Assembly (NCBI GenBank): GCA_977030845.1
Contig: OZ365109.1
Coordinates: 53,010,001-53,074,000 of the forward strand
Source of the DNA: Fimbriosthenelais zetlandica
Taxonomy: Eukaryota
Length of the DNA: 64,000 bases
Direction of reading: 5' to 3'
A program made the translations under genes and the position numbers. The notes below the pieces were generated by a model. The model was not told the DNA's origin, searched no databases, and saw only the letters and a list, made by a program, of their open reading frames with translations. This document shows, in pieces, positions 17,601-56,300 of the stretch. How positions within the stretch are numbered: the stretch's first letter is position 1; every line of letters starts with the position of its first letter.

Positions 17601-18954
17601 GCCACTTTCCACCTTGAACATTTTATCTATTCAATCTCTTGAACTTTCGATCCGAAGACGGAGGTGTTCATCACAGGTCCATAATTGTTTTATTACATAC
17701 TTGTAAAATTTCTCTTCACTTGAATACACTCATAAAATGCCCTGGTCTTGATCTATATGTCCTTTTCATATAGATCGCGATAACATTTTATTAAACCGGG
17801 AACTGATAACTTATTGGATATTTTCCAATCGAGCACTTCTCATATAGTTTTTTTAGTCGATGGGTCATGGGTAAATTCAACTGGATTTTTTGGGCCTTGC
17901 GTGTATTTTGTTGCCGTGATAATTGTGGCACATGTGCCTCACCACACATAATTATATGTAATACAGCCCACAAGTTTATGCAATACAGCACGCTATCCTT
18001 GCAGTTACACCGTGGTCTCGGGTCACCGGACTATCCAAGTGGCGTCTTGCAAAGTTTGATTGGGTAAATGTGTACATTTCAGTATACTTAAGGGCCCAGT
18101 GAACCATGCAACTCACACAGTGAACCTAGTGGCCGTCTGTGAACCCAATCTCTCGTGGCAGTGAATGAACTGAATGCCCCACAATGCCTCGTTTGAATGA
18201 CGATGTACGACCCTAGATCTGAATGCCAGTGACAAGTTAATATCCCCCCACCCAAGACGATCCCCCCGCCCACCCCCCACCTTGGACTATTCCCCCCTTG
18301 GAGAACTCCCCCTCCCACTAGGACAACCCCCTTGAATTGTATTGTAGCGCTGTAGAAATGCCAATGAAAATTGGGTTTAAAGTAAAACAAACATCTTTGT
18401 CCCCTTCTACGGCCTTTCCCTCCTCCTCCTCCTCCTCCTCCTCCTGGTCCTCACCCCATCTGTCCCTTTCCACGGCCTTCTTCCTGTTCCTCACCTCCAT
18501 TGTCCCCTTCCAAGCCTTCTCTTGTCTAGTCTGCCTTTCTGCGAGTTCTACTGAACTTCTGGCATAAGCAACCTGTAGAAATACACCTATATTTGCATAT
18601 TCTGAGGTCAAAAATTCTCTAAAAGTCAGAAAAATAGGTTAATTAGCCTGATTCATTCATGGTGCATTGTGCTGGTAGGTGACGACACGCAAGGCCAAGT
18701 TTCTCATTGTTTGTACAGAGCATGAGGGATTCATAGCCCTCAAGGTGATTTCTTATTTGAGTCATTTTCCCTAATTTTCTTTCATTAGCAGCCACCTATT
18801 TAGGTTACTATTCAATTTACTAGAAAAATATAACCCATTGAGGTTAAATGCATTTGTGTAGATAGTACCATCATCCAAAAAGTTTTTATAGGAAAGACCA
18901 CCCAAACCAAAACATACGAGTTCGTAATTTAAGTAGAACTCATCCGATCTAATG

Positions 18955-20319: not shown

Positions 20320-22237
20320 CTTCTACGGCCTTTCCCTCCTCCTCCTCCTCCTCCTCCTCCTGGTCCTCACCCCATCTGTCCCTTTCCACGGCCTTCTTCC
20401 TGTTCCTCACCTCCATTGTCCCCTTCCAAGCCTTCTCTTGTCTAGTCTGCCTTTCTGCGAGTTCTACTGAACTTCTGGCATAAGCAACCTGTAGAAATAC
20501 ACCTATATTTGCATATTCTGAGGTCAAAAATTCTCTAAAAGTCAGAAAAATAGGTTAATTAGCCTGATTCATTCATGGTGCATTGTGCTGGTAGGTGACG
20601 ACACGCAAGGCCAAGTTTCTCATTGTTTGTACAGAGCATGAGGGATTCATAGCCCTCAAGGTGATTTCTTATTTGAGTCATTTTCCCTAATTTTCTTTCA
20701 TTAGCAGCCACCTATTTAGGTTACTATTCAATTTACTAGAAAAATATAACCCATTGAGGTTAAATGCATTTGTGTAGATAGTACCATCATCCAAAAAGTT
20801 TTTATAGGAAAGACCACCCAAACCAAAACATACGAGTTCGTAATTTAAGTAGAACTCATCCGATCTAATGTAGGTTCCGCACAAATGATCACATAGGTTC
20901 CGCACAAATGATCACATAGGTTAGCAGCATAATTATCACACAGAATTTTAAGTAGCTGAGACAATGGCAGGGGGCGTGATACCCCGAGGGTGCGGCATAG
21001 ACAGCTCTACCCTACATCCTTTCATGTATACATATATGGTCATGTACAGTGGAACCTCACAAATAAAACTACTCGTGGGAGTAGTAAAATGACATAAAGA
21101 CCACATTTAATGTGGTCTTTATTCCGAGGTGGTTTCAGTTTTGTATTTCGGCCAGGATCAGGAGTGTGTACTATAGAAATGTACATGTACATTTACATGT
21201 TTAATTTCTCCCACTGTTCGTCAGGGTACAATTGTGCACAGAATAATAAATATAGTTAATGTGAAATATATTATATATAATTAAAAGAGTATAGGTAACC
21301 CGAACAAAATTATTTGTTCATATTAAAATGTTTTATTAGTTTCAAATCAAATCAATAGGCTACTATATGTGCTGTGTTTTCATTAGATGTGTTTAAAGTC
21401 GGACATGGCCATTCAGCGCTACGCTATTTTTGTGAGTGAAATTGAGAAAAGTACACCTTTATGCGTATTGTCCCTTCAAGATTTCTTCCAGTTGGACAGT
21501 CTGAAATAGGAATTTCCTCTAGTATTTGCTGTCATTACATTTATTTTTTTAAATGTTATTAGAAATATAAGTATATAAGTATATTTTTTTTATTAAAATT
21601 AAACAGATACATGCCTCTGTTCAGAGTATTATCAGTACTGTTTTTAACATATTTACAATTATAACACATTCAATATTTATGTATGTGTACATCAGTTATT
21701 AGATTGTTATATCTAGATTTCCATAATTAATATAACAATTTTCTTTCTTGTATTTGTATCACCATTCTTCCCTCACATATGCCCTTGTCAATCACCCCCC
21801 TCTTAGAAACAATAAAGGCTCTAGCCTGGTGCGAGCCAGTCTGGAGATAAGACTTACTCATTCATTCCTCCTCTTCATCATACAATTACCTTAATATTTC
21901 GGACACATACATAAGACAATAACAGCACCTCTCTTCATAACAAGATAAACCGCGCACCATTTTGCATTGTTAATACATTAATATGAAAGAAATTACAAAT
22001 AAAATACCAGCTCACAGTTTGTCTGAATATGCATTACATCCTTAAATTTCACCAGTAACAACTATTATATAAAGTGAGTCAATTTAACTAGTTATGCCTA
22101 GTATATTTTCCATAAAAAATTATTGTTCTGACAGTAGTATTTAACTCTTTTTTTAAATTGTCACATATTGGTAAGTCCCTTAATTCTTCCCTTAAGTTAT
22201 TCCATATACAAACTCCTGTACACAACGTTGTATTTCT
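20320..22237. repeat. Tandem duplication, copy 2
   Basis: Near-identical to 18404-20321, with 2-bp (CT) microhomology at the junction 20320-20321. Confidence 0.97.
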
Positions 22238-22605: not shown

Positions 22606-23667
22606 TTAAGGGTACCTGGTATTTCCCCTCGCCCACATTATATCAAACGGCCAGTTCCGATCACATGTTTTTGGAGACAATTGTTTTAGCTCCCTCGTTT
22701 CAAAAATGCGTGTAAAACCTCGTTTCTCAAGAAATTCCATCATATTCCATGTCAAGTTCCTCTCTTTCGTCACCTCCAATGTTCTGCTGCAGTGTTTCCT
22801 GAGATGACCAAATTCCATGAAAATATTTGGAATTTCAATAGCGTCAAAAAAGTGGCTGGCTTTCGCCAGGGCTAAACTTTCCGCTCCCTCAATGTCTATC
22901 TTCACGATAGCTTTAGTAATATTCCTGGCTCGTAGTAAAGGCACCAAGTCATCCATGTAGATGCTATCCACGGAGATACAGGCATTATTCACACAAGCCT
23001 CTTTCCCACCCAAAATATTGGTCGCTCCTAGATTTGGGTAGACAATCCTCAAGAAAGCTTCCTCTCGTTTGTTGGACAAAGCGTTGATAACTAAACTAAT
23101 ATTCTCCTCAAATTTGTTGAGTTTGATAGCCTTGTGGAATCGAAGAAAGTTGTTTGGAAGGGGCTCGATTGAAATGACTTTTCGACCCATGGCTGCAGCT
23201 GTTAAGGAGAAAGTGCCGATGTTTGCCCCAATATCAATAACACTGAGGTCCCTATCTCTGTATAGGGCTCTCTTAAATTGTGACACAATTTTAGGCTCCC
23301 AGACACCTCGTGCCTTAATCGTACCAGATACTCGGACATCTTGTTTAGTATTATGGATACATATTTGGAATGAGGGATGCATCTTAAATGGTAAACACAT
23401 CCCATTGTCAATACTTGGTTTTGTCAAATCAAGCATTGTGAAATAATTGTTATCTGAGTCATTCACGGTTGCAATCTTTAGGTGTGGCCTGGATACGGGA
23501 ATATATGTCCAATGTAGCTGCCCAGCTGAATCCACTTGCAGTCTGAAGAGTTTGATAAATCCTTGATATATGGGAGTTTCTAAGGTATAGAATAGAAAAC
23601 CCAAACCCATCATCATTATAAGTCCTGCGAAATAGTTCGACTTTATATTTGACATGTTGAGGGACAT
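22606..23667 (-). CDS. FkbM-family (Methyltransf_21 / TIGR01444-like) SAM-dependent methyltransferase, predicted type II membrane protein, 353 aa, single coding exon
   Basis: ATG at 23667, TAA at 22606-22608. Motifs VIDIGANIGTFSL (SAM-binding motif I), ISIEPL, VKIDIEGAE and IFMEF. Hydrophobic segment YFAGLIMMMGLGFLFYTL at about aa 12-29. Sequons NDS, NIS, NIT and NLT lie after the TM segment. An in-frame stop lies upstream of the ATG. Confidence 0.93.
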   Translation of the reverse strand: MSLNMSNIKSNYFAGLIMMMGLGFLFYTLETPIYQGFIKLFRLQVDSAGQLHWTYIPVSRPHLKIATVNDSDNNYFTMLDLTKPSIDNGMCLPFKMHPSFQICIHNTKQDVRVSGTIKARGVWEPKIVSQFKRALYRDRDLSVIDIGANIGTFSLTAAAMGRKVISIEPLPNNFLRFHKAIKLNKFEENISLVINALSNKREEAFLRIVYPNLGATNILGGKEACVNNACISVDSIYMDDLVPLLRARNITKAIVKIDIEGAESLALAKASHFFDAIEIPNIFMEFGHLRKHCSRTLEVTKERNLTWNMMEFLEKRGFTRIFETRELKQLSPKTCDRNWPFDIMWARGNTRYP

Positions 23668-23884
23668 CCTTGTGAAGTTGTTGGTTCTTTAAAATACACT
23701 TCCCTGATGCCAGTCACTCCTTAGCCTATTTGCCTATGAACGTAAATTTGGTTTTCTGCAGTTGGGGGTTAGAACATAGAATGGCTTACTTCCTCCTCAT
23801 TGTTATTCGTTCGGAACTGAACCAGAACGACTCCTTGGAACAACTTTCAGCGAATGAGCATGCAGTAAATATATATATGCCCCC

Positions 23885-41339: not shown

Positions 41340-44300
41340 CTACAAGTGAAAAATATAAAAAGACAAAAGTTTATCAAAAGAAATGCTTGTTATTTCACAT
41401 CAAGAGGAGTTATATCTATAGAGATATAAACATTCTTTTTCATAATGATATCAGTTAACATTTACATGCTAAATTATGTGCTGTGAAGCTTGAAATACAT
41501 GTAAAATGTTTTGAAACACAACTTTCAGACGAGACACGTCTGGGGCCAGTTGTGAAGTAAGGTAACACTGTACGTGCATGTTTTGTCTGCTGGTGATGAT
41601 GTAAACAGGGCCATAGAAATCTATCACGTGCATGCATGTTGTGCAGGCCTTATTTTCTGATTTTGCCAATGTGCATTTGCTGCATGAGGCAAGCATCATG
41701 GCGACCGGAAAAAGCGCATGACTTGAGCTTCAATCGAAGTCTCGGGCACGTGATCACTGGCGAGATTTCCAGCAAAGATGGCGCCATGAGCCATGGAGTC
41801 AGAGTAAATGGGCGCTTGTGACTAATATATGGTATTATCATGGCAATATGAAATGCACTTTATGACCTGTAGGCCAGGGCAATGATCAGCCATTATTATG
41901 GCATTTTTGTGAGATGGATTTTGGCTACTTGTCCATATTCTTGGCAACCTCAGTCAATGTTCAGTCTTGTCCAAAGATTGGTAAATCATACACATCCTCT
42001 GCCCAAATCACTTTAAGAAATATCAGTAGTGGCCTATCATTCAGAGTTGATGTATAAAGATCTGCATGTAAAATATACACAGTGGCGTTCATAGAAATCA
42101 AATGATGCAGTCTTTTAACAGCAACTGGTTACATAGGCCTATATGTACTTGGCATCTTTTGAAGAATGTTTGAGGAAGTATTAAAAGTGAATGATATATG
42201 AGATGCTCTGATGTGAAACATACCTTTGTTAGAGCGATATATATTTCCTGCTCTGCAATCCGCCTTCCTGCAACACATTAGTTAATGTGATTAAATACAT
42301 GAGGTTTTTACATGGCGTTTGCATATCAGTATTAGTCGGGATGCCATCCAATACATTATAAGTACATTCTTTAGGTTTCTTTTGGACCAAATCCAAGTGA
42401 AATAATCGTCAGAATAGAGAAATTGTGAGATACCTAAACACATCCTTGCCCCATGACCCCAGGGTAAGTTAGTGAATGCCTTCAGGTTCTCGTCTGTCTG
42501 CCCACGCAGCCATCTTTCCGGACGGAATTCCTCAGGGTCGTGAAATAGTTCCGGGTCATGACCCATGCCGTAAAGGTTGGCTTGGACATGGGTCTGAAAG
42601 CACAAGAAAACGATGATACATATTTCATTATTTTCTTTCTTTTTCTCTTCAATATGGAAAGGCATGTTGTTCTTCCTCTAAATGTATAAACCAAATGCTG
42701 TACGAAGAACATAGAAATATCTTATATGCAGAATACAATATTAGAAAGTCCTTTGTACAAGGCCTGGGCATTTTAAAATGAAATTATTTAATGGTTCGCA
42801 GGTATTTCCGCATCAGAAATCAATGAAGCTTTAAAAAATGACTGAAAGCAATTACACCGTCAGACCTAATGACCCAAACCCATGGGGGGAAATAAATGAA
42901 AAAAATTAAAATAATTACGTTACAAAACTGAAAATCATTTTCAAAAATGAAAAAGCCAGTCCGAGAAAAAAAAACTGGAGGCAGCTGGCATCAATGATTG
43001 AAAAATGAAAAATCGAATGTTATGCAACTCTTCCAAAGATGACAGCATTTAGGAACCAATAATGAGAAGCAACATTTGGTAGACACTACCCGGGCGTCTC
43101 TACTTGAAGCGTGGTAAGTGAAGAGAGTCAGGCAGAGTTCCCACACCCATAGAATGGGGAATTACAAGGTGACAATTGCCATTTTCCACGGGTCAAGGAA
43201 GCTGCACTTGAGAAATCAGAATTCCGATAGAGAGCGCTGGGTGTTGATCCCACTTGTAGCCCTCATCATGGGCTTATAATGGAGTTTTATTAGAAGCCCA
43301 GGCGCTCACTCCCTCCTGTGATTTTTGGAATAGAGATGCCTTTCTGGTGAAAAAGATATTCCAAGCGCTTTACATGTCTCCTATGTATGGATTTTGTATA
43401 GCACTAGGATTGTGGGATTGAAGGCAAAATCCATAAAAGCTGAGATAGGACTATCGTTTTACTGTGCATGGCCGAAGAGGAGGATCTATCATATAGCCCA
43501 TTGTGATACTGCTCTATTGTTTACACAATTGTTTTTGGTAATTGCTGCCATTGCAGGCAACTTTTATGTCGGAAAATACATACTTCTGGAGATCAAAACA
43601 TCAGACCACGCATGTGAATGATAAGTTACTTTCTGAGAATATTGATTTGTAACATTGTTTTCAAAGGACACACCAACTAAACTGAGTATTTTCCAGAGGA
43701 ACTGATCATAAAACCAGTGATACTGACTATCTAGACTCATTACCTATTATTATACAGTCCCATTCACAGTTACCTGCTTTGCATTGACTTCTTAATTCAA
43801 AGAGTATTTAACGATTTTGTGCCTCATTTCTTACCCCTGCAGGAACATGGTATCCGCCAATCTCAAGATCCCGAGCGATGATTCGACTAGTGGCAAATGT
43901 TATCGGGTACAGTCTGAAAAAAGTAGAGTATGTAAATGTCTCTGGAGTAAAATAATTGCCATAAAATCGTATACAAATCTACAGTCCCTTCACTATGCGC
44001 AGGTCCATTCCCTCATTGCCTAACGAACTGTCTTTGAATTTACATTTTATATATCTAAGGGCACATGTTGGTTGTGCAATGGGGTTCTGTTCTCCCACGT
44101 GTGGTCTTCTATATATACATAGCCTATCACTCTAACGTTGCTCCCATTGCACAATTAACGAATTGGCGATTCAAAGGGCAACTGTTGGTTGTGCAATGAG
44201 GGATATACATCTTGCACGTATCATGAGGTCTCGTATATAGTCTTGGTCCACATCTCCCTCTAACCCTGCCCTGCTCCAGTAAGTGGATCAGGGGACATGG

Positions 44301-50300: not shown

Positions 50301-53300
50301 CTGTTCTCTATTGTCTCAGCATATCTTTCCCCCCTTTCCCTATTTCTCCCCCTATTGTCAACTCATACTCCCAGTGCTATACATTTATGTCTACCTTCAG
50401 TGACATCTCTATCTCTATCGCCATCTCTATCTCTATCTCCCTTTCTTTATTCTACTCTCTCTGTCTATCTGCCCCATATCTACCCCCTTACATTCTGTCT
50501 CTTTATATGGCCTCTATCCATTACTACCCCCCCTCGCTTTCTTCTATTCTCCCCCTTTCTCTATCTGCCCTATGTCCGTATGTCCCTCACTTTATTCTAT
50601 CCCTCCCACTCACGCTGAGTGACTCCCACCACTTCTCACCTTGTCTACAAACTTCTGGCCTATACGGAGCACCTCGTCAGCGTGATGCCTGTAGCGGCGC
50701 CAGGTGGCGGTAGGGTAGATCTTGTACACTGGCACGTTGTACATCAGTGGTTGCATGAGACTGAAGAACCCGATCAGATGATGGAGATAGAGCTTGGTGT
50801 CTGGGTCCGAGGGTTCAGCCAGACAGCCAATCCTATCCTCAAACAGCACCATCCCAATGGCTGCAAAACAAGAAATTCACACTTGAAAATCATTTGAAAC
50901 CATCCACAATTTGCCCAAATTCCAATCACAAAATTATGACCAATTTTTATGGACATATGCAATGCATAACTTGTGCAACTAATGTTCACGAAGGGTAAAA
51001 ATGATGATGACAAGATTAGATTAGGGTATAATGACCTATTATTGAGATAATCATTTACCCCTCTACTTCTCATTCTGAAATCACTGGAGTATAATTGTAC
51101 TCTCCGACTGACTTGTAATGGTCTTGTAATAAGGCCTTAATTCCTTTTGGGAATTGAGTATTTCTTTTATTCATGGGATTATTTTTTAAGAACAATACTA
51201 GAATAATTTAAGGCTGTACGGTTTCCTAGGATATTGCCCTCGTCTTCATTCTGTACTTCATCTGAATTTCAATGAATCCCTGTGTATTACATTTGAGGCG
51301 TTAATAGTGTGTATAATTATACATGTATGCATGCCCAAGTGACAGTATGTCCCAAGTCGCCATATGTCCAAATGACAATAAGAATATTTCCTATTTTCAC
51401 TTTTTGAAAGTAAAAGACTATATGACAAAATATCATGTTATTGATCTCTTTTTCAGGACTAATGCAGGCTTAAAAAGAGATCCAAACATGTCCATATAAT
51501 ATATATATATAACAATATCCTGCCTAAGTATGCAACCAACATTGCCTTTTGGAGAAATGAATGAACATGACCTACATAACAAGAGATCATGTTGTTGGTC
51601 ATTTTCCTCATGAATAATTATGGAACTAATCATGTACACTTGGCCTTTATTTATTACATCAAAATCTCTGAAATTGTTCCTAGTTAAGCACCCCATCAGT
51701 AGGCTCCTACCTCCTACCAGTTTCCCTCATCTTCCTCCCACTCCGCTATAAATCTACCACCTGCACACTCTTCCCTTTATTTATGAGCAGCTCGGGTCGG
51801 AGTGGCGAGTGTCCCTTTCGTCATTATTTGTCATGATGACATAAAAACGTCACATTCTATTGGCATGTCCCTCTACGGGGCAATGTCAAAATACCTTCCT
51901 TTGATTTATCTTTGGATTCCATCTAGAGTAATTTAAGGAAGGAAATGCACTTCTTGTACTTGAGGAGAGCAGAATCAATAGATTCATATTCGGCTCTCCA
52001 TGGTCGGAAGCCGTTTCCTCCCAGCATAAATTTGCATGTTTAAGTGCTGCGCTAAATGTTCATTATGAGTGTCATTATTGGATGCCCGGTACAAATTACT
52101 AACACAGATGACACCATCATTCATTAAAAGTTTAGCTATCATATTACATAACAAGGTTCCCTTCCTTGATGGGTTAAAACTGACTAAATTGCTTGTTTCA
52201 TGAAATTAGTTTTAATTTCAAATGAATGGCATTTCTATTCTGGAGATGATATCCATAATACAATACAAACTCTCACTGACTAAAACTGTCTTATTTTATG
52301 AAATTGAAATTAGTTTTAACTTTATTTCAACTATATTTAAACTATCTTTGATATAATACAAACACTATGTGTTGTATCCACAGGTATTCTCTTCCTCAAG
52401 TATTGTAGGCTAATCCATGTCTTCTTTTTAGAACAGAACACTTTCTAATGACCATAGAACTTTTTCAGAGTGGACTACTCGTAAATTATTATGAATCACT
52501 GAGACCATCCGGTCTGTCTAACTCTATAATGGTGGAGACTTTGGCAACATTCTATTTTCTGACATTGTTTTCAATGAAACTCGTGACCACATTGTCCATC
52601 GCGTGTCTCAACAAGACTCCAGACAAATCTAATTGTCAGAACCTGTTGCACTCATTGTGAACAAAATGAAATAAAATCTTTGAATCGCCCACCCTCTCCT
52701 CCCCCTCTCTCCACCTTCACCGTTCCCCTCCACCCACATCCCGACCATCCATCATTGGGACTGGATACTGGTGTCATGGAGGCACTCCGGCCCCTTCCTT
52801 CTCTCTGGAGTAACATTTATTCGAATCTCAATGCTCAACTCCTATAAAGAGAGCCATAAGTTTCTATTCTCTCGACAAGAGGGCAACATATATTCGAATC
52901 AAGTAGGAATGAGGGTGCAGTAATGTCGGGATAGGGACTTGAACCTATACTCTCTTAAAAAAGTCAAATGGATGCATAATTTGTACTGATGCGCCCAGTT
53001 GATCATTAATGGATGAAGAATGCAGAAAATAAGTGGGAATACTTGATTGCCCTTGTTCCTGCCAAGTGACATCATCCTGACCGTACATCTGTGTGTAAGC
53101 AGCTATTCCTTATTATTGCTAACTAGGTTTGGATATGTTAACATTTTGTGGGATTGGAATTTCCCTCAATGCCCAATCAAGCAACTCGATTTTCTAAATC
53201 TTAGTTTTTCGAGTAGCAGACAATTCTCATTCATAATACTCACACTCTAGTGCCCACCGAAAAAACTGCAGTTCTATACTCGGCACGGTGCCATCATCCT

Positions 53301-56300
53301 GTCTCAGGTCATGGAGATGACGTATGAAGTCGTCAGCGACGTCATTCATGGCGTCACAGTAACCTTGGACTTCCTTCGGCCTTAACATCTTCTTGCTCAG
53401 CACTGTTCGATGCCTGTGCCATTCTTCTCCTTGTCTGAAACGAATATTGGTTTTTATAATATGGAAAATGATATAATTATATATATCAAAGTGGAGAAAA
53501 TGTAAGAGCATTTCTAAGGTATTGAAATCGTGTATACATGTAGGCCTAGGTATTGAAAACATGCCATAGTTGGCAGTCTAAAGCAGTAACAACGTCCATC
53601 TTGTAGCGAGAAAGTGTTCTTGATATTGACACGAGAGACGCTGCTGCTGCATGCTACACATCCAGTTGACTAACTGTAATGATGGGGAGATAAATCATCT
53701 TAATTCAATTATGACACGAGACGTTCCTAACAAGGGACATGTTCATTGTCTGCCTTCCTGAATATATCCACAGATGCCTCAATGGTGATCAGCCCCTGCT
53801 TTGTGAGAGACTGTCTGTTTTTATTCTTCTTTAGATTATATCTGTTCGAGTTTCTCTGAATATGTTCATCGACAGGGTCTGTATCCTTGGATAGAGCCAT
53901 AACATAAATTTGTGAGATGCTAAAAAGTGAGTGGACTGGAAGAACAAAGGGTCGCTGATAATAAGGAAAAGAAGTGGGGAAGTACGATGAACTAGCAGTG
54001 AATAGGGCATGAAAAAGTTGGTATTACTATAGGAAAAAGATAATATCAATACATAAGGGATGTGGATTATAAGGGATTTGGAATAATAGGAATAATACAA
54101 TATTAAACAATTTCCTCTGCTTCGAGGAAATATTTTTATAATTTCCTTATAAAATTTGAGACGGAATCTCATTCAGTACCTTGAATGTGTCAATAGAAAA
54201 AGGCAATTTCTTTTCCTTAAAACACTCACGAGCTGACCGTTCCCAAGCTAAGTTTTCTTGTCCGCCTGTAGTGGGCCAGAGGTTCCATCTCTATTCTGTT
54301 GGGGAACTTGCCGTCCACCCTCATGACCTTTGAGTACTCCTGTGGGTCAGAGACAATGACTGCAGTACGATTGGCAATCCTCTCCTTATAGACTGGTCCA
54401 TATTCCTTGGCCCTTGTCTGCATGGCCTAATAATATGGGATTGAAATGAAGAGTTTGGGATAAAGCAAAATGATATTGTACAACCACGAGATCTCTATTT
54501 GCTGGTCGATTCAGAATAACATAAAACATAATCATTATATCTCTTTCAATTGGATTTTCTAGGTTAAAAAATTAACATACCAACAATTCTCTGCTTAATA
54601 AATCACTAATAAATTTTATTCCGGAAAAATTCCACAGAAAATATTCAAACTAAATAATATTAATTAATGTAGCGCTCGACGTACCTTAAACATTTTCTCA
54701 AAGCGGAAGCCATCTTTCTTTATATAATCCCAGAGAGTTCCGAAGAGTATATTTCCTGCTGGACCGGGCATCGATTCAAACGGTCTCACTAAATCCTTCT
54801 GGTCACTAAAATGGTGTTGAGAACGCTCGGATCTCTGCGAAAGAGGGCAATAGTATTGGACAACAGTATTGGCTTGTTCCCACCCTTTCTTGTCCTCAAA
54901 CTCCTCTTCCCAACAGATCAATTTTTCCCTTCCCTTCTTTACATTCGTGTCTCGCTCCCTCAGAGCCTCCTAGATTAATCTATGATTTCCGATATCAAAA
55001 ATATTTAAAAAAAATTCAATTCTGAAAGGACAATTTCTCCTTTGAATATTTGACAGAAGCATAATTCTGTGACTGATGAACTTGAACGGTTGGAAAGCTA
55101 TGATTTGGATTATAAAAAATATATAGATCTTCTTATCCAGGAAGGGGACGGAGGTCATAAAATTGGCAAGCTCTGATGATGTGAGGAAAACGTTAATTAA
55201 CATTCAGAGCAACGATCCGTCTTTGAACGTGAATGGTCCTATAGTCGGTGCGACAACATCGACTTGGTATTTTCCATCCTGCGTATATATTCAAGAACAG
55301 GAGAACTGGTTTCTTTAATACGAGTTTCTTTTGCTCGGAAATTCCGGTATTGACGCTTTACTGTATATATATATATACGCTCGTATGTGAAACTTCGTAT
55401 GTAAAACACAAACTGGTCATTTTATATAGCCATGGAGAATTCTGACTGGTATACACTACTGTATTCTGGCTAAAACCACACTATAGGTGGATCAATATCT
55501 GTGATATATCAGTCCATGGAAAGAGATGACATGAGGCGAGAAATGCATCGGCAAAATGTTCCATTAATCATTGCCTAGGGAAAATGATACTCTCCTGAGC
55601 TAGGTTAAAATAACCTATGAATGTATTGAATAAATAAGTCTTATTTATCTTAAAACAAAGATATCAAAGGAACAGGATAAGCTAGGCAATTTATGTCGCG
55701 ATGTTAGAAGGGACAAAAAATGTTAGAATAAGAAGTTGAAAGAAATTTTGCAACTAGATGTAATATAGGGCCTACCTTACGAATTGTTAATAACTGTATT
55801 AATCTTAAATATCCTTTACCACAACCCCCTCACTCCTCTTCCCCGTCTCTCCCATTGCAATCACGAAAGCAATCATGAAAAGAGCCGCGATGATGGACTG
55901 TCATGCATGGATTCTTATGGAACCCAGATTTGAACTATTTGACCTATTGTCCAAGGACCTTTTGATAAGTTAAAGTTAAAATTGAAATATAAAGATGAAA
56001 GTCGTAAGGATTGCATTGCTTTAAGCCTAAGCCTAAGTTACGAACTGTTAATGGTATTATATTAAATGGCCCTTGTCCAAGTCCCCTTCCCTCATTCCGT
56101 ATCCTTCAAAGAACCGTGATTCGAAGTCTCATTCATGGCTTCCCTTAGAGACCAGTGTTGACACATTTTCCCACAAAATCCACCCTTCATGGCCATCAGA
56201 TTAAACTATCCTTTCCAACAACAATCTCCTCTCCCATTTGTTCAGTGCGTGCCGCATGAAATCTACTCCCTCAACAATTTCCTGAGGAACAAATTTTATG

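What the first reader, a model, noticed from the sequence alone, without database searches (positions are those of the whole stretch)
22606..23667. Intronless, membrane-anchored FkbM-family methyltransferase: candidate Golgi glycan O-methyltransferase
Seen: a complete FkbM motif set behind a short N-tail and one TM helix, four N-glycosylation sequons in the predicted luminal part, and no coding introns in a locus whose neighbour gene has ten. Established: the FkbM family includes O-methyltransferases such as FkbM (FK520) and the rhizobial fucose 2-O-methyltransferase NoeI. O-methylated glycans occur in molluscs, annelids, planarians and nematodes, and to my knowledge the animal enzymes remain poorly defined. 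Inference: the type II topology is that of Golgi glycan-modifying enzymes, so this is a plausible glycan (or secreted-metabolite) O-methyltransferase. The lack of introns suggests retroposition or an old horizontal transfer.
Basis: partly seen in the sequence, partly recalled or inferred. Interest (0 to 1): 0.7.

Follow-up and report, generated by a model that had tools for sequence, protein, structure and literature searches.

The report
Membrane-anchored FkbM methyltransferase gene, spiralian family
This is an intact single-exon animal gene for a membrane-anchored, bacterial-type (FkbM) methyltransferase; it belongs to a large uncharacterised family in molluscs, annelids and their relatives that is a concrete but untested candidate for the unknown enzymes that O-methylate invertebrate glycans.

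Summary
Window 22606-23667 (minus strand) is one uninterrupted 353-codon ORF. It scores above the curated cut-offs of PF05050 and TIGR01444. It has a 12-residue N-tail, one hydrophobic anchor (residues 13-29), a poorly ordered stem and a well-modelled class I methyltransferase domain (pLDDT 89). Every residue shared by bacterial FkbM enzymes is kept.

It is not a lone retrocopy. The same genome holds at least 16 uninterrupted paralogues, some in tandem. dN/dS among them is 0.13-0.31. The window copy sits in a seven-member expansion specific to this genome.

The wider clade (molluscs, annelids, a nemertean; probably rotifers) branches apart from the 20 bacterial and 2 other eukaryotic relatives sampled. 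It gained the N-terminal anchor and conserved cysteines that those bacterial proteins lack.

The closest characterised structural relatives are mostly sugar O-methyltransferases. A homologue of the proposed Golgi SAM transporter is present. Reviews from 2019 and 2023 state that animal glycan methyltransferases are unidentified.

The glycan substrate, Golgi location and expression remain untested, because no sequencing runs were listed. The four sequons are no more than chance gives. The scan's first stage noted another copy of this family elsewhere in this genome.

Verdict: a new member of a known kind and a useful candidate.

The parts
22606..23667 (-). Complete single-exon coding sequence, 353 aa plus stop
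   Evidence: Its ends match those of the full-length paralogues.
23632..23667 (-). Short N-terminal tail (aa 1-12), predicted to be cytosolic
   Evidence: Paralogues carry 2-6 K/R here. The window copy has only K9.
23581..23631 (-). Hydrophobic signal-anchor segment (aa 13-29)
   Evidence: Kyte-Doolittle 17-mer score 1.91. Modelled as a helix over residues 10-28. Found in 89 of 123 animal-clade representatives and in 0 of 20 bacterial ones.
23410..23580 (-). Stem region (aa 30-86), poorly conserved and modelled with lower confidence
   Evidence: pLDDT 60-81 per 10-residue block. Gappy and variable in the paralogue alignment.
22609..23409 (-). Globular luminal domain (aa 87-353). It comprises an animal-specific hairpin carrying C91 and C103, followed by the class I SAM-methyltransferase core.
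   Evidence: pLDDT mostly 90-98. Fold matches span residues 87-350. C91 and C103 are conserved in the animal clade and absent from bacterial relatives.
22714..23235 (-). Pfam PF05050 (Methyltransf_21, FkbM) match, aa 145-318
   Evidence: TIGR01444 matches aa 143-272.
23215..23241 (-). SAM-binding motif I, VIDIGANIG (aa 143-151). E168-P169 follows at the end of the next strand.
   Evidence: D145, G147, G151 and E168 are invariant in 31 sequences. They are identical in bacterial FkbM relatives.
22879..22902 (-). Family hallmark K-x-D-x-E-G-x-E (aa 256-263, KIDIEGAE)
   Evidence: D258 is invariant. K256, E260, G261 and E263 are at least 90% conserved. The motif is shared with all 20 bacterial comparators.
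22915..22923 (-). The only conserved N-glycosylation sequon (N249-I-T)
   Evidence: Present in 7 of 12 paralogues, namely all seven of the window copy's own sub-clade.

Best explanation
The gene encodes an active S-adenosylmethionine-dependent methyltransferase of the FkbM family. A short tail and a single N-terminal signal anchor insert it into the secretory pathway, so that a flexible stem and the catalytic domain face the lumen. This is the layout of Golgi glycan-modifying enzymes.

In this reading, an MFS_5 (SAMT-1/MFSD5-type) transporter imports SAM into the lumen, and the enzyme transfers a methyl group to a hydroxyl of a sugar on a glycoprotein, glycolipid or secreted polysaccharide.

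The window copy is one of at least 16 intronless paralogues. They arose by DNA-level tandem and dispersed duplication within an old spiralian family. The copies probably differ in acceptor specificity.

**Shown:** family membership, intact cofactor and hallmark residues, the conserved anchor, purifying selection in the family, and presence of the transporter homologue.

**Inferred:** catalytic activity, orientation, Golgi residence and the sugar acceptor.
For: **Family and fold**
- HMM scores lie above the curated cut-offs.
- The AF2 model has pLDDT 89 and a class I methyltransferase fold.
- E124, D145-x-G-A-N-x-G151, E168-P169, N212, D239, K256-x-D-x-E-G-x-E263 and E285 are identical to bacterial FkbM relatives.

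**Nearest characterised relatives (Swiss-Prot fold hits, E 1e-10 to 3e-8)**
- They are SdnD, FkbM, Beauveria methyltransferase 1, AglP (named there a hexuronic acid methyltransferase) and NoeI (named there a 2-O-methyltransferase).
- From my own knowledge, four of these five act on sugars.
- Bacterial relatives often carry glycosyltransferase domains or also match the RfbT model.

**Secretory-pathway features**
- 89 of 123 animal-clade representatives have an N-terminal anchor. Its median start is residue 10, and 2.9 K/R against 0.5 D/E precede it. None of 20 bacterial relatives has one.
- The conserved cysteines are specific to the animal clade.

**Evidence that the gene is functional**
- dN/dS is 0.13-0.31 among paralogues. 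The window copy stayed intact at dS above 1.
- The family is transcribed elsewhere. Complete ORFs occur in a transcriptome, and an FkbM-domain gene is listed among the Vibrio-responsive factors of a clam (PMC9125321).

**Pathway context**
- MFS_5 homologues are present in this genome. The C. elegans orthologue has been proposed as the Golgi SAM transporter needed for methylated glycans (bioRxiv 10.1101/2021.07.06.451061).
- Methylated N-glycans are documented in molluscs, planarians and nematodes (PMC6935376).
- The C. elegans N-glycan methyltransferases are reported as unidentified (PMC6422873, PMC7614267).
- The Methyltransf_21 family is expanded in Alvinella, alongside carbohydrate sulfotransferases and glycosyltransferases (PMC12403961).
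Against: - There is no expression evidence for this copy. No sequencing run was listed.
- No tool here tests localisation, orientation or acceptor.
- The window copy's anchor is only moderately hydrophobic and has a single K before it. A cleaved signal peptide, giving a secreted enzyme, is therefore possible.
- The sequon count is not above chance.
- The neighbourhoods of three paralogue clusters hold tubulin, a GPCR and an NHL-repeat gene, not glycosylation genes.
- No nematode or planarian member was seen among the best hits, although those animals also methylate glycans. The searches list only the top hits, so this is weak evidence either way.
- FkbM itself methylates a macrolide, not a sugar.
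Confidence: 0.5

Rival explanations
1. It is the same active luminal or secreted FkbM methyltransferase, but its acceptor is not a glycan. The acceptor would be a secreted small metabolite, a lipid or a protein side chain.
For: The founding enzyme FkbM methylates a macrolide hydroxyl and is the second-best Swiss-Prot fold hit. The family is very large and diverse, with 122,817 representatives at E <= 0.001. No glycosylation genes lie next to the paralogue clusters examined.
Against: By my reading of their names and functions, most of the nearest characterised relatives act on sugars. Bacterial relatives are repeatedly fused to glycosyltransferases or match RfbT. The type II layout is that of glycan-modifying enzymes. 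A known but orphan activity, glycan O-methylation, exists in these phyla (PMC6935376).
Confidence: 0.22
2. It is a non-catalytic relative of Drosophila Star: a type II membrane protein that uses the methyltransferase-like luminal domain to escort cargo out of the ER.
For: Star (P42519) is found by fold search (E 3.4e-7, its residues 279-578 aligned). PANTHER names the Methyltransf_21 animal family 'Protein Star' (PMC12403961).
Against: All cofactor-binding and hallmark residues are intact and identical to bacterial enzymes. Star aligns at only 10% identity and ranks below six proteins, five of them named enzymes. Star's matched domain begins near its residue 279, whereas this protein has a 12-residue tail. 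I could not fetch Star's sequence to check its motifs.
Confidence: 0.05
3. It is an intact-looking but silent copy: a recently inactivated or never-expressed duplicate in a fast-turning-over gene family.
For: No RNA evidence could be obtained. The family is expanding, and some PF05050 loci in this genome contain stops. The window copy has the weakest anchor and the fewest tail charges of its sub-clade.
Against: The 353-codon frame is intact in DNA whose mean open frame is 16 codons. All 16 motif positions scored are retained, although dS is above 1 and dN about 0.33 against the nearest paralogues, giving dN/dS 0.19-0.31.
Confidence: 0.1
4. It is bacterial contamination or a recent horizontal transfer.
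For: The coding sequence is intronless and the family is mainly bacterial.
Against: The gene lies inside a chromosome-scale contig at position 53 Mb. Its GC content (0.38) matches its surroundings. It groups with 38 other spiralian sequences on a branch with SH-aLRT 98, apart from the bacteria. It carries animal-specific anchor and cysteine features.
Confidence: 0.02

Closest known systems
Bacterial, archaeal and fungal FkbM-family O-methyltransferases (FkbM, NoeI, AglP, SdnD, Beauveria MT1; Pfam PF05050, TIGR01444)
   Same: They share the same HMM family above the cut-offs, the same fold and identical cofactor and hallmark residues. Most of them methylate sugar hydroxyls or carboxyls.
   Different: They are soluble cytoplasmic enzymes of about 240-290 aa with no anchor. 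The window protein adds a signal anchor, a stem of about 55 residues, and an N-terminal hairpin and loops with conserved cysteines. Identity is only 13-16% in the fold alignments and 26-38% in the best local BLASTP alignments to the nearest bacterial relatives.
Uncharacterised 'Methyltransferase FkbM domain-containing proteins' of molluscs, annelids, nemerteans and probably rotifers (Patella, Gigantopelta, Mytilus, scallops, Capitella, Paralvinella, Lineus)
   Same: They share the same clade (SH-aLRT 98), the same layout and an intronless coding sequence wherever this could be seen.
   Different: Identity is only 24-40%. The window copy belongs to a seven-member expansion private to this genome. 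Its nearest outside relatives are two unnamed ENA proteins.
Drosophila Star (P42519) and vertebrate METTL24 (Q5JXM2)
   Same: They are animal proteins of the secretory pathway with an FkbM-like fold. Star is type II (plus my own knowledge).
   Different: They are much more distant: E 3.4e-7 and 8.6e-6, TM-score by query 0.39 and 0.32, identity 10-13%. Star has a long N-terminal region and is known as a cargo escort, not as an enzyme. METTL24 has no known function.
Plant Golgi polysaccharide methyltransferases (DUF579 GXM/AGM)
   Same: The proposed logic is the same: a luminal SAM-dependent O-methylation of glycans, supplied by MFS_5 transporters (PMC6508755, bioRxiv 10.1101/2021.07.06.451061).
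   Different: They belong to an unrelated protein family. The analogy is one of function only.

Membership tests
FkbM family methyltransferase (PF05050 / TIGR01444) | HMM score above the curated cut-off over nearly the whole model | tested here: met
   PF05050 scores 41.2 bits against 22.7, over profile positions 1-171 of 173. TIGR01444 scores 70.8 bits against 37.7.
FkbM family methyltransferase (PF05050 / TIGR01444) | Class I (Rossmann-like) SAM-methyltransferase fold | tested here: met
   The AF2 model has pLDDT 89. VIA-align gives Z 11-13 to many SAM methyltransferases, including 2py6, deposited as 'Methyltransferase FkbM' (Z 11.7, rmsd 3.1, 167 residues aligned).
FkbM family methyltransferase (PF05050 / TIGR01444) | Motif I D-x-G-A-x-x-G, an acidic residue after strand 2, and the K-x-D-x-E-G-x-E hallmark | tested here: met
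   D145, G147, A148, G151, E168, K256, D258, E260, G261 and E263 are all present and identical to 20 bacterial relatives.
FkbM family methyltransferase (PF05050 / TIGR01444) | SAM-dependent methyl transfer | not testable with these tools
   This needs a biochemical assay.
Golgi type II glycan-modifying enzyme (architectural class) | Short cytosolic tail, single N-terminal signal anchor, stem, C-terminal luminal catalytic domain | tested here: met
   Tail 12 aa, anchor residues 13-29, low-confidence stem residues 30-86, globular domain residues 87-353. The layout is conserved in the clade. Orientation is inferred from the positive-inside pattern of the relatives. It is weak in this copy.
Golgi type II glycan-modifying enzyme (architectural class) | Golgi residence | not testable with these tools
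   This needs tagged localisation.
Golgi type II glycan-modifying enzyme (architectural class) | Luminal donor supply: a Golgi SAM transporter of the MFS_5/SAMT-1 type in the genome | tested here: met
   PF05631 loci lie on C25 (243 bits) and C19. The C25 protein is 61% identical to the Capitella, Owenia and Lingula 'molybdate-anion transporter'. This is a necessary condition, not a discriminating one, because the family is widespread in animals.
Golgi type II glycan-modifying enzyme (architectural class) | Glycan acceptor | not testable with these tools
   There are only indirect hints.
Drosophila Star-type cargo escort | Long N-terminal cytoplasmic region before the anchor, and a closer relationship to Star than to the enzymes | tested here: not met
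   The tail is 12 aa here, whereas Star's matched domain starts near its residue 279. Star ranks eighth, at 10% identity.
Processed retrogene | Poly(A) remnant and target-site duplications, and an intron-bearing parent gene | tested here: not met
   There is no A-tract after the 3' end and no flanking direct repeat. All 16 closest paralogues are equally uninterrupted. An ancient event would have lost these marks, so this excludes only a recent one.

The most novel reading that the evidence does not exclude
The spiralian clade of anchored, intronless FkbM proteins is the long-sought set of Golgi glycan O-methyltransferases. These would make the 3-O-methyl-mannose, 3-/4-O-methyl-galactose, methyl-GalNAc and methyl-fucose of mollusc and other spiralian glycans. 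The genome-specific expansions, such as the seven-member group that holds the window gene, would diversify acceptor specificity, perhaps under pressure from lectins that target methylated glycans.
Probability: 0.4. Interest if true: 0.75.

Novelty: new member of a known kind. Interest (0 to 1): 0.5.

Why it matters
O-methylated sugars are a signature of mollusc, planarian and nematode glycans, and defence lectins target them. Yet reviews from 2019 and 2023 state that the responsible animal methyltransferases are unknown (PMC6422873, PMC7614267). None of the ten literature searches here found one named.

This family offers concrete, clonable candidates. Each is a single exon of about 1 kb with a removable anchor, so the question can be tested directly by expression and glycan assays.

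If the candidates are confirmed, three things follow:
- Glycan methylation in animals gets a gene family.
- Methylation-free invertebrate expression hosts and glycan-antigen studies become possible.
- Such a result would show how a bacterial-type enzyme was fitted with an anchor and disulfides for work in the secretory pathway.

If it is not confirmed, this remains an ordinary, if expanded, uncharacterised methyltransferase family.

Tried and rejected
**Led nowhere**
- Expression: two searches for public sequencing runs listed none.
- Intron status of named orthologues: the Patella and Lineus proteins are not on record in the contig index. Two ENA homologues were found as uninterrupted ORFs, but without DNA.
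- Genomic context: 40 kb around each of three paralogue clusters holds beta-tubulin, a rhodopsin-type GPCR, an NHL-repeat ORF and low-complexity ORFs. There are no glycosyltransferases.
- Solved structures: sequence and profile searches of the PDB gave only generic motif I matches. Fold searches gave a flat list of class I methyltransferases that does not discriminate substrate.

**Considered and rejected**
- Sequon enrichment as evidence of a luminal location: rejected, because it is not above chance.
- Recent retroposition and contamination: both rejected.

**Organism identity**
- Mitochondrial COX1 was located, but TGA codons break it into pieces too short to search usefully.
- The MFS_5 protein's best named hits are Capitella, Owenia and Lingula, all at 61%.

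**Other limits**
- Wohlschlager et al. 2014 (PMC4103367) is not held in the library.
- I could not fetch the Star or METTL24 sequences to compare their motifs.

Full report
**1. The observation**

The region 22606-23667 on the minus strand is a single ORF of 353 codons with an ATG start and in-frame stops upstream. Stop to stop it is 360 codons. The mean open frame in the window is 16 codons, and the next longest real one is under 200.

Pfam PF05050 (Methyltransf_21, FkbM) matches residues 145-318 over 171 of 173 profile positions. E is 2.4e-10 and the score is 41.2 bits against a cut-off of 22.7. NCBIfam TIGR01444 matches at E 1.6e-19, 70.8 bits against 37.7.

The N-terminus is a 12-residue tail followed by a hydrophobic stretch, F13-L29. 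There are six cysteines. Sequons lie at N4, N69, N189, N249 and N304. GC content (0.38) matches the surroundings.

**2. Structure and residues**

An AlphaFold2 model built on 31 family sequences has mean pLDDT 89 and pTM 0.83. Its parts are:

| Residues | Feature |
|---|---|
| 10-28 | helix |
| about 30-86 | lower-confidence stem |
| 87-353 | compact domain |

Fold searches place that domain firmly among class I SAM-methyltransferases.

Against Swiss-Prot models, the best hits (E 1.8e-10 to 3e-8) were:
- SdnD
- FkbM
- Beauveria methyltransferase 1
- the archaeal hexuronic acid methyltransferase AglP
- the uncharacterised putative methyltransferase Jann_4284
- the Nod-factor 2-O-methyltransferase NoeI

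Drosophila Star follows at 3.4e-7 (10% identity), and human METTL24 at 8.6e-6.

In a 31-sequence alignment, E124, D145, G147, G151, E168, N212 and D258 are invariant. N195, D239, D240, K256, E260, G261, E263, E285 and W339 are at least 90% conserved. A column-by-column comparison shows that the window protein has the same residues as 20 bacterial FkbM relatives at motif I (D-x-G-A-N-x-G), at E168-P169 and at the K-x-D-x-E-G-x-E hallmark. C91, C103 and the other cysteines occur only in the animal sequences. Nothing suggests a dead enzyme.

**3. The family in this genome**

A six-frame search of the window's own assembly (447 Mb, 79 contigs; the window lies at C1:53.01-53.07 Mb) found 17 matches, none interrupted by stops. 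They include tandem arrays on C38, three copies at 6.448-6.454 Mb and two at 6.925-6.928 Mb.

Every one of the 12 full-length paralogous ORFs extracted is a single ORF of about 345-513 aa. All but the long-tailed L009 copy (513 aa) begin with a short basic tail and a hydrophobic segment. A Pfam-based search finds at least 20 loci, among them a few broken or multi-exon ones.

Nei-Gojobori dN/dS among paralogues is 0.13-0.31. The window copy is 52-54% identical in protein to its nearest relatives, with dS of 1.2-1.8. It is therefore an old duplicate that has stayed intact.

No poly(A) remnant or flanking repeat is present. The scan's first stage also noted another intronless anchored FkbM gene elsewhere in this genome. 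That agrees with the family picture.

**4. The family elsewhere**

The word-indexed searches found relatives at 24-40% identity in:
- gastropods (Patella, Gigantopelta, Bulinus);
- bivalves (Mytilus and four scallops);
- annelids (Capitella, Paralvinella);
- the nemertean Lineus;
- many unnamed assemblies.

There is a sharp drop from at least 167 bits for this group to at most 117 bits for everything else.

The exhaustive profile search counts 1,145 cluster representatives at E <= 1e-30 and 41,373 at E <= 1e-10.

Structure and feature searches add a large cluster whose commonest phylum is Rotifera (TM 0.71) and one from Streptophyta.

A maximum-likelihood tree of 63 sequences puts all 39 spiralian rows on one side of a branch (SH-aLRT 98), away from 20 bacterial and 2 other eukaryotic rows. 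It places the window protein in a group of seven paralogues private to this genome (99). Other paralogues from the same genome group with annelid proteins.

Of 123 single-domain-size representatives of the animal clade, 89 have an N-terminal hydrophobic 17-mer. It starts at median residue 10 and is preceded by 2.9 K/R against 0.5 D/E. None of the 20 bacterial proteins has one.

Homologues in two ENA assemblies are likewise uninterrupted ORFs. The intronless coding sequence and the anchor are therefore features of the clade, not of this copy.

**5. What it most likely does**

The protein has everything an active FkbM-type enzyme needs. It also has the layout of a type II secretory-pathway enzyme.

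- The nearest characterised relatives mostly methylate sugars. This rests on the names and on my own knowledge of SdnD and the Beauveria enzyme.
- Bacterial relatives are often fused to glycosyltransferase domains or also match the RfbT model.
- The donor must reach the lumen. The genome has two MFS_5 loci. The C. elegans orthologue of this family has been proposed as the Golgi SAM transporter required for methylated glycans (bioRxiv 10.1101/2021.07.06.451061).
- N-glycan methylation is documented in molluscs, planarians and nematodes (PMC6935376).
- The enzymes are explicitly described as unidentified (PMC6422873 in 2019, PMC7614267 in 2023).
- None of ten literature searches found a named animal glycan O-methyltransferase.
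- The Alvinella genome paper lists the Methyltransf_21 family (PANTHER 'Protein Star') among expanded families, together with carbohydrate sulfotransferases and glycosyltransferases (PMC12403961).

I therefore favour a luminal glycan O-methyltransferase, at about 0.5. Activity in the secretory pathway is more secure than the nature of the acceptor.

**6. Weak points**

- Expression of this copy is unknown, because no runs were listed.
- The four luminal sequons are what chance gives (shuffle mean 2.3, P = 0.19). Only N249 is conserved, and only within the sub-clade.
- The window copy's anchor is the least hydrophobic but one of its group and has a single lysine before it. Cleavage and secretion cannot be excluded.
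- No glycosylation genes flank the paralogue clusters examined.
- The origin of the clade, whether ancient transfer or ancient retrogene, cannot be decided from an unrooted tree with limited sampling.

**7. Comparison and novelty**

The protein is a member of the FkbM family by every testable criterion. It is not a Star-type protein by architecture, and it is closer to the enzymes than to Star.

Members of this animal clade are already in public databases as 'Methyltransferase FkbM domain-containing protein', without function. The gene is thus a new member of a known kind. Its value is as a well-defined candidate for an open question in glycobiology.

The organism is a spiralian. The best named matches of its MFS_5 protein are annelids and a brachiopod at 61%. 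I could not name it.

Noticed in passing
window 42291-42665 and 53227-53562, minus strand: These are exons of a cytochrome P450 gene. The first holds the haem-binding region (E 3.5e-16); the second is an N-terminal exon. The gene ends about 18 kb upstream of the methyltransferase gene on the same strand, so the methyltransferase gene is not nested in it.
   Followed up: partly
window 18404-18703 and 20320-20619: A 300-nt direct repeat at 100% identity, 1916 nt apart. Each copy overlaps an ORF with a glutamate run. It could be a recent local duplication, a mobile element or an assembly artefact.
   Followed up: no
window 23756-23785, minus strand: A pyrimidine-rich tract ending in CAG lies about 90 nt upstream of the start codon. 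It could be the acceptor of a 5'-UTR intron. There is no RNA evidence to test this.
   Followed up: no
   Followed up: no
G000:C25:13853554-13854372 (L026 1546-2682, +): An MFS_5 (SAMT-1/MFSD5-type) transporter is encoded largely in one 378-codon ORF, and a second, multi-exon copy lies on C19. The nearly intronless copy may itself be a retrogene.
   Followed up: partly
G000:C1:12983737, C10:47244414 and C10:47248990; C10:26352162, C1:66141304, C11:48495766, C19:33114638: These are further PF05050 matches. Some have several in-frame stops and some cover only the C-terminal half of the model in short ORFs. They are either pseudogenes or exons of intron-bearing FkbM-domain genes, possibly Star- or METTL24-like.
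   Followed up: no
P0152 cluster (51 members, mostly JGI/IMG metagenome contigs of 2-7 kb): These proteins of up to 989 aa carry up to three tandem copies of the animal-type FkbM domain. They gave the best score of the exhaustive search (739 bits). Their source organism is unknown.
   Followed up: no
G000:C79 (L025): The mitochondrial contig. nad2 is followed directly by cox1 on one strand. Read with the bacterial code, cox1 has 10 TGA codons, as expected for an invertebrate mitochondrial code.
   Followed up: partly
G000:C38:6446609-6448028 (L014 6609-8028, +): Beta-tubulin exons lie immediately beside the three-copy tandem array of methyltransferase paralogues.
   Followed up: no
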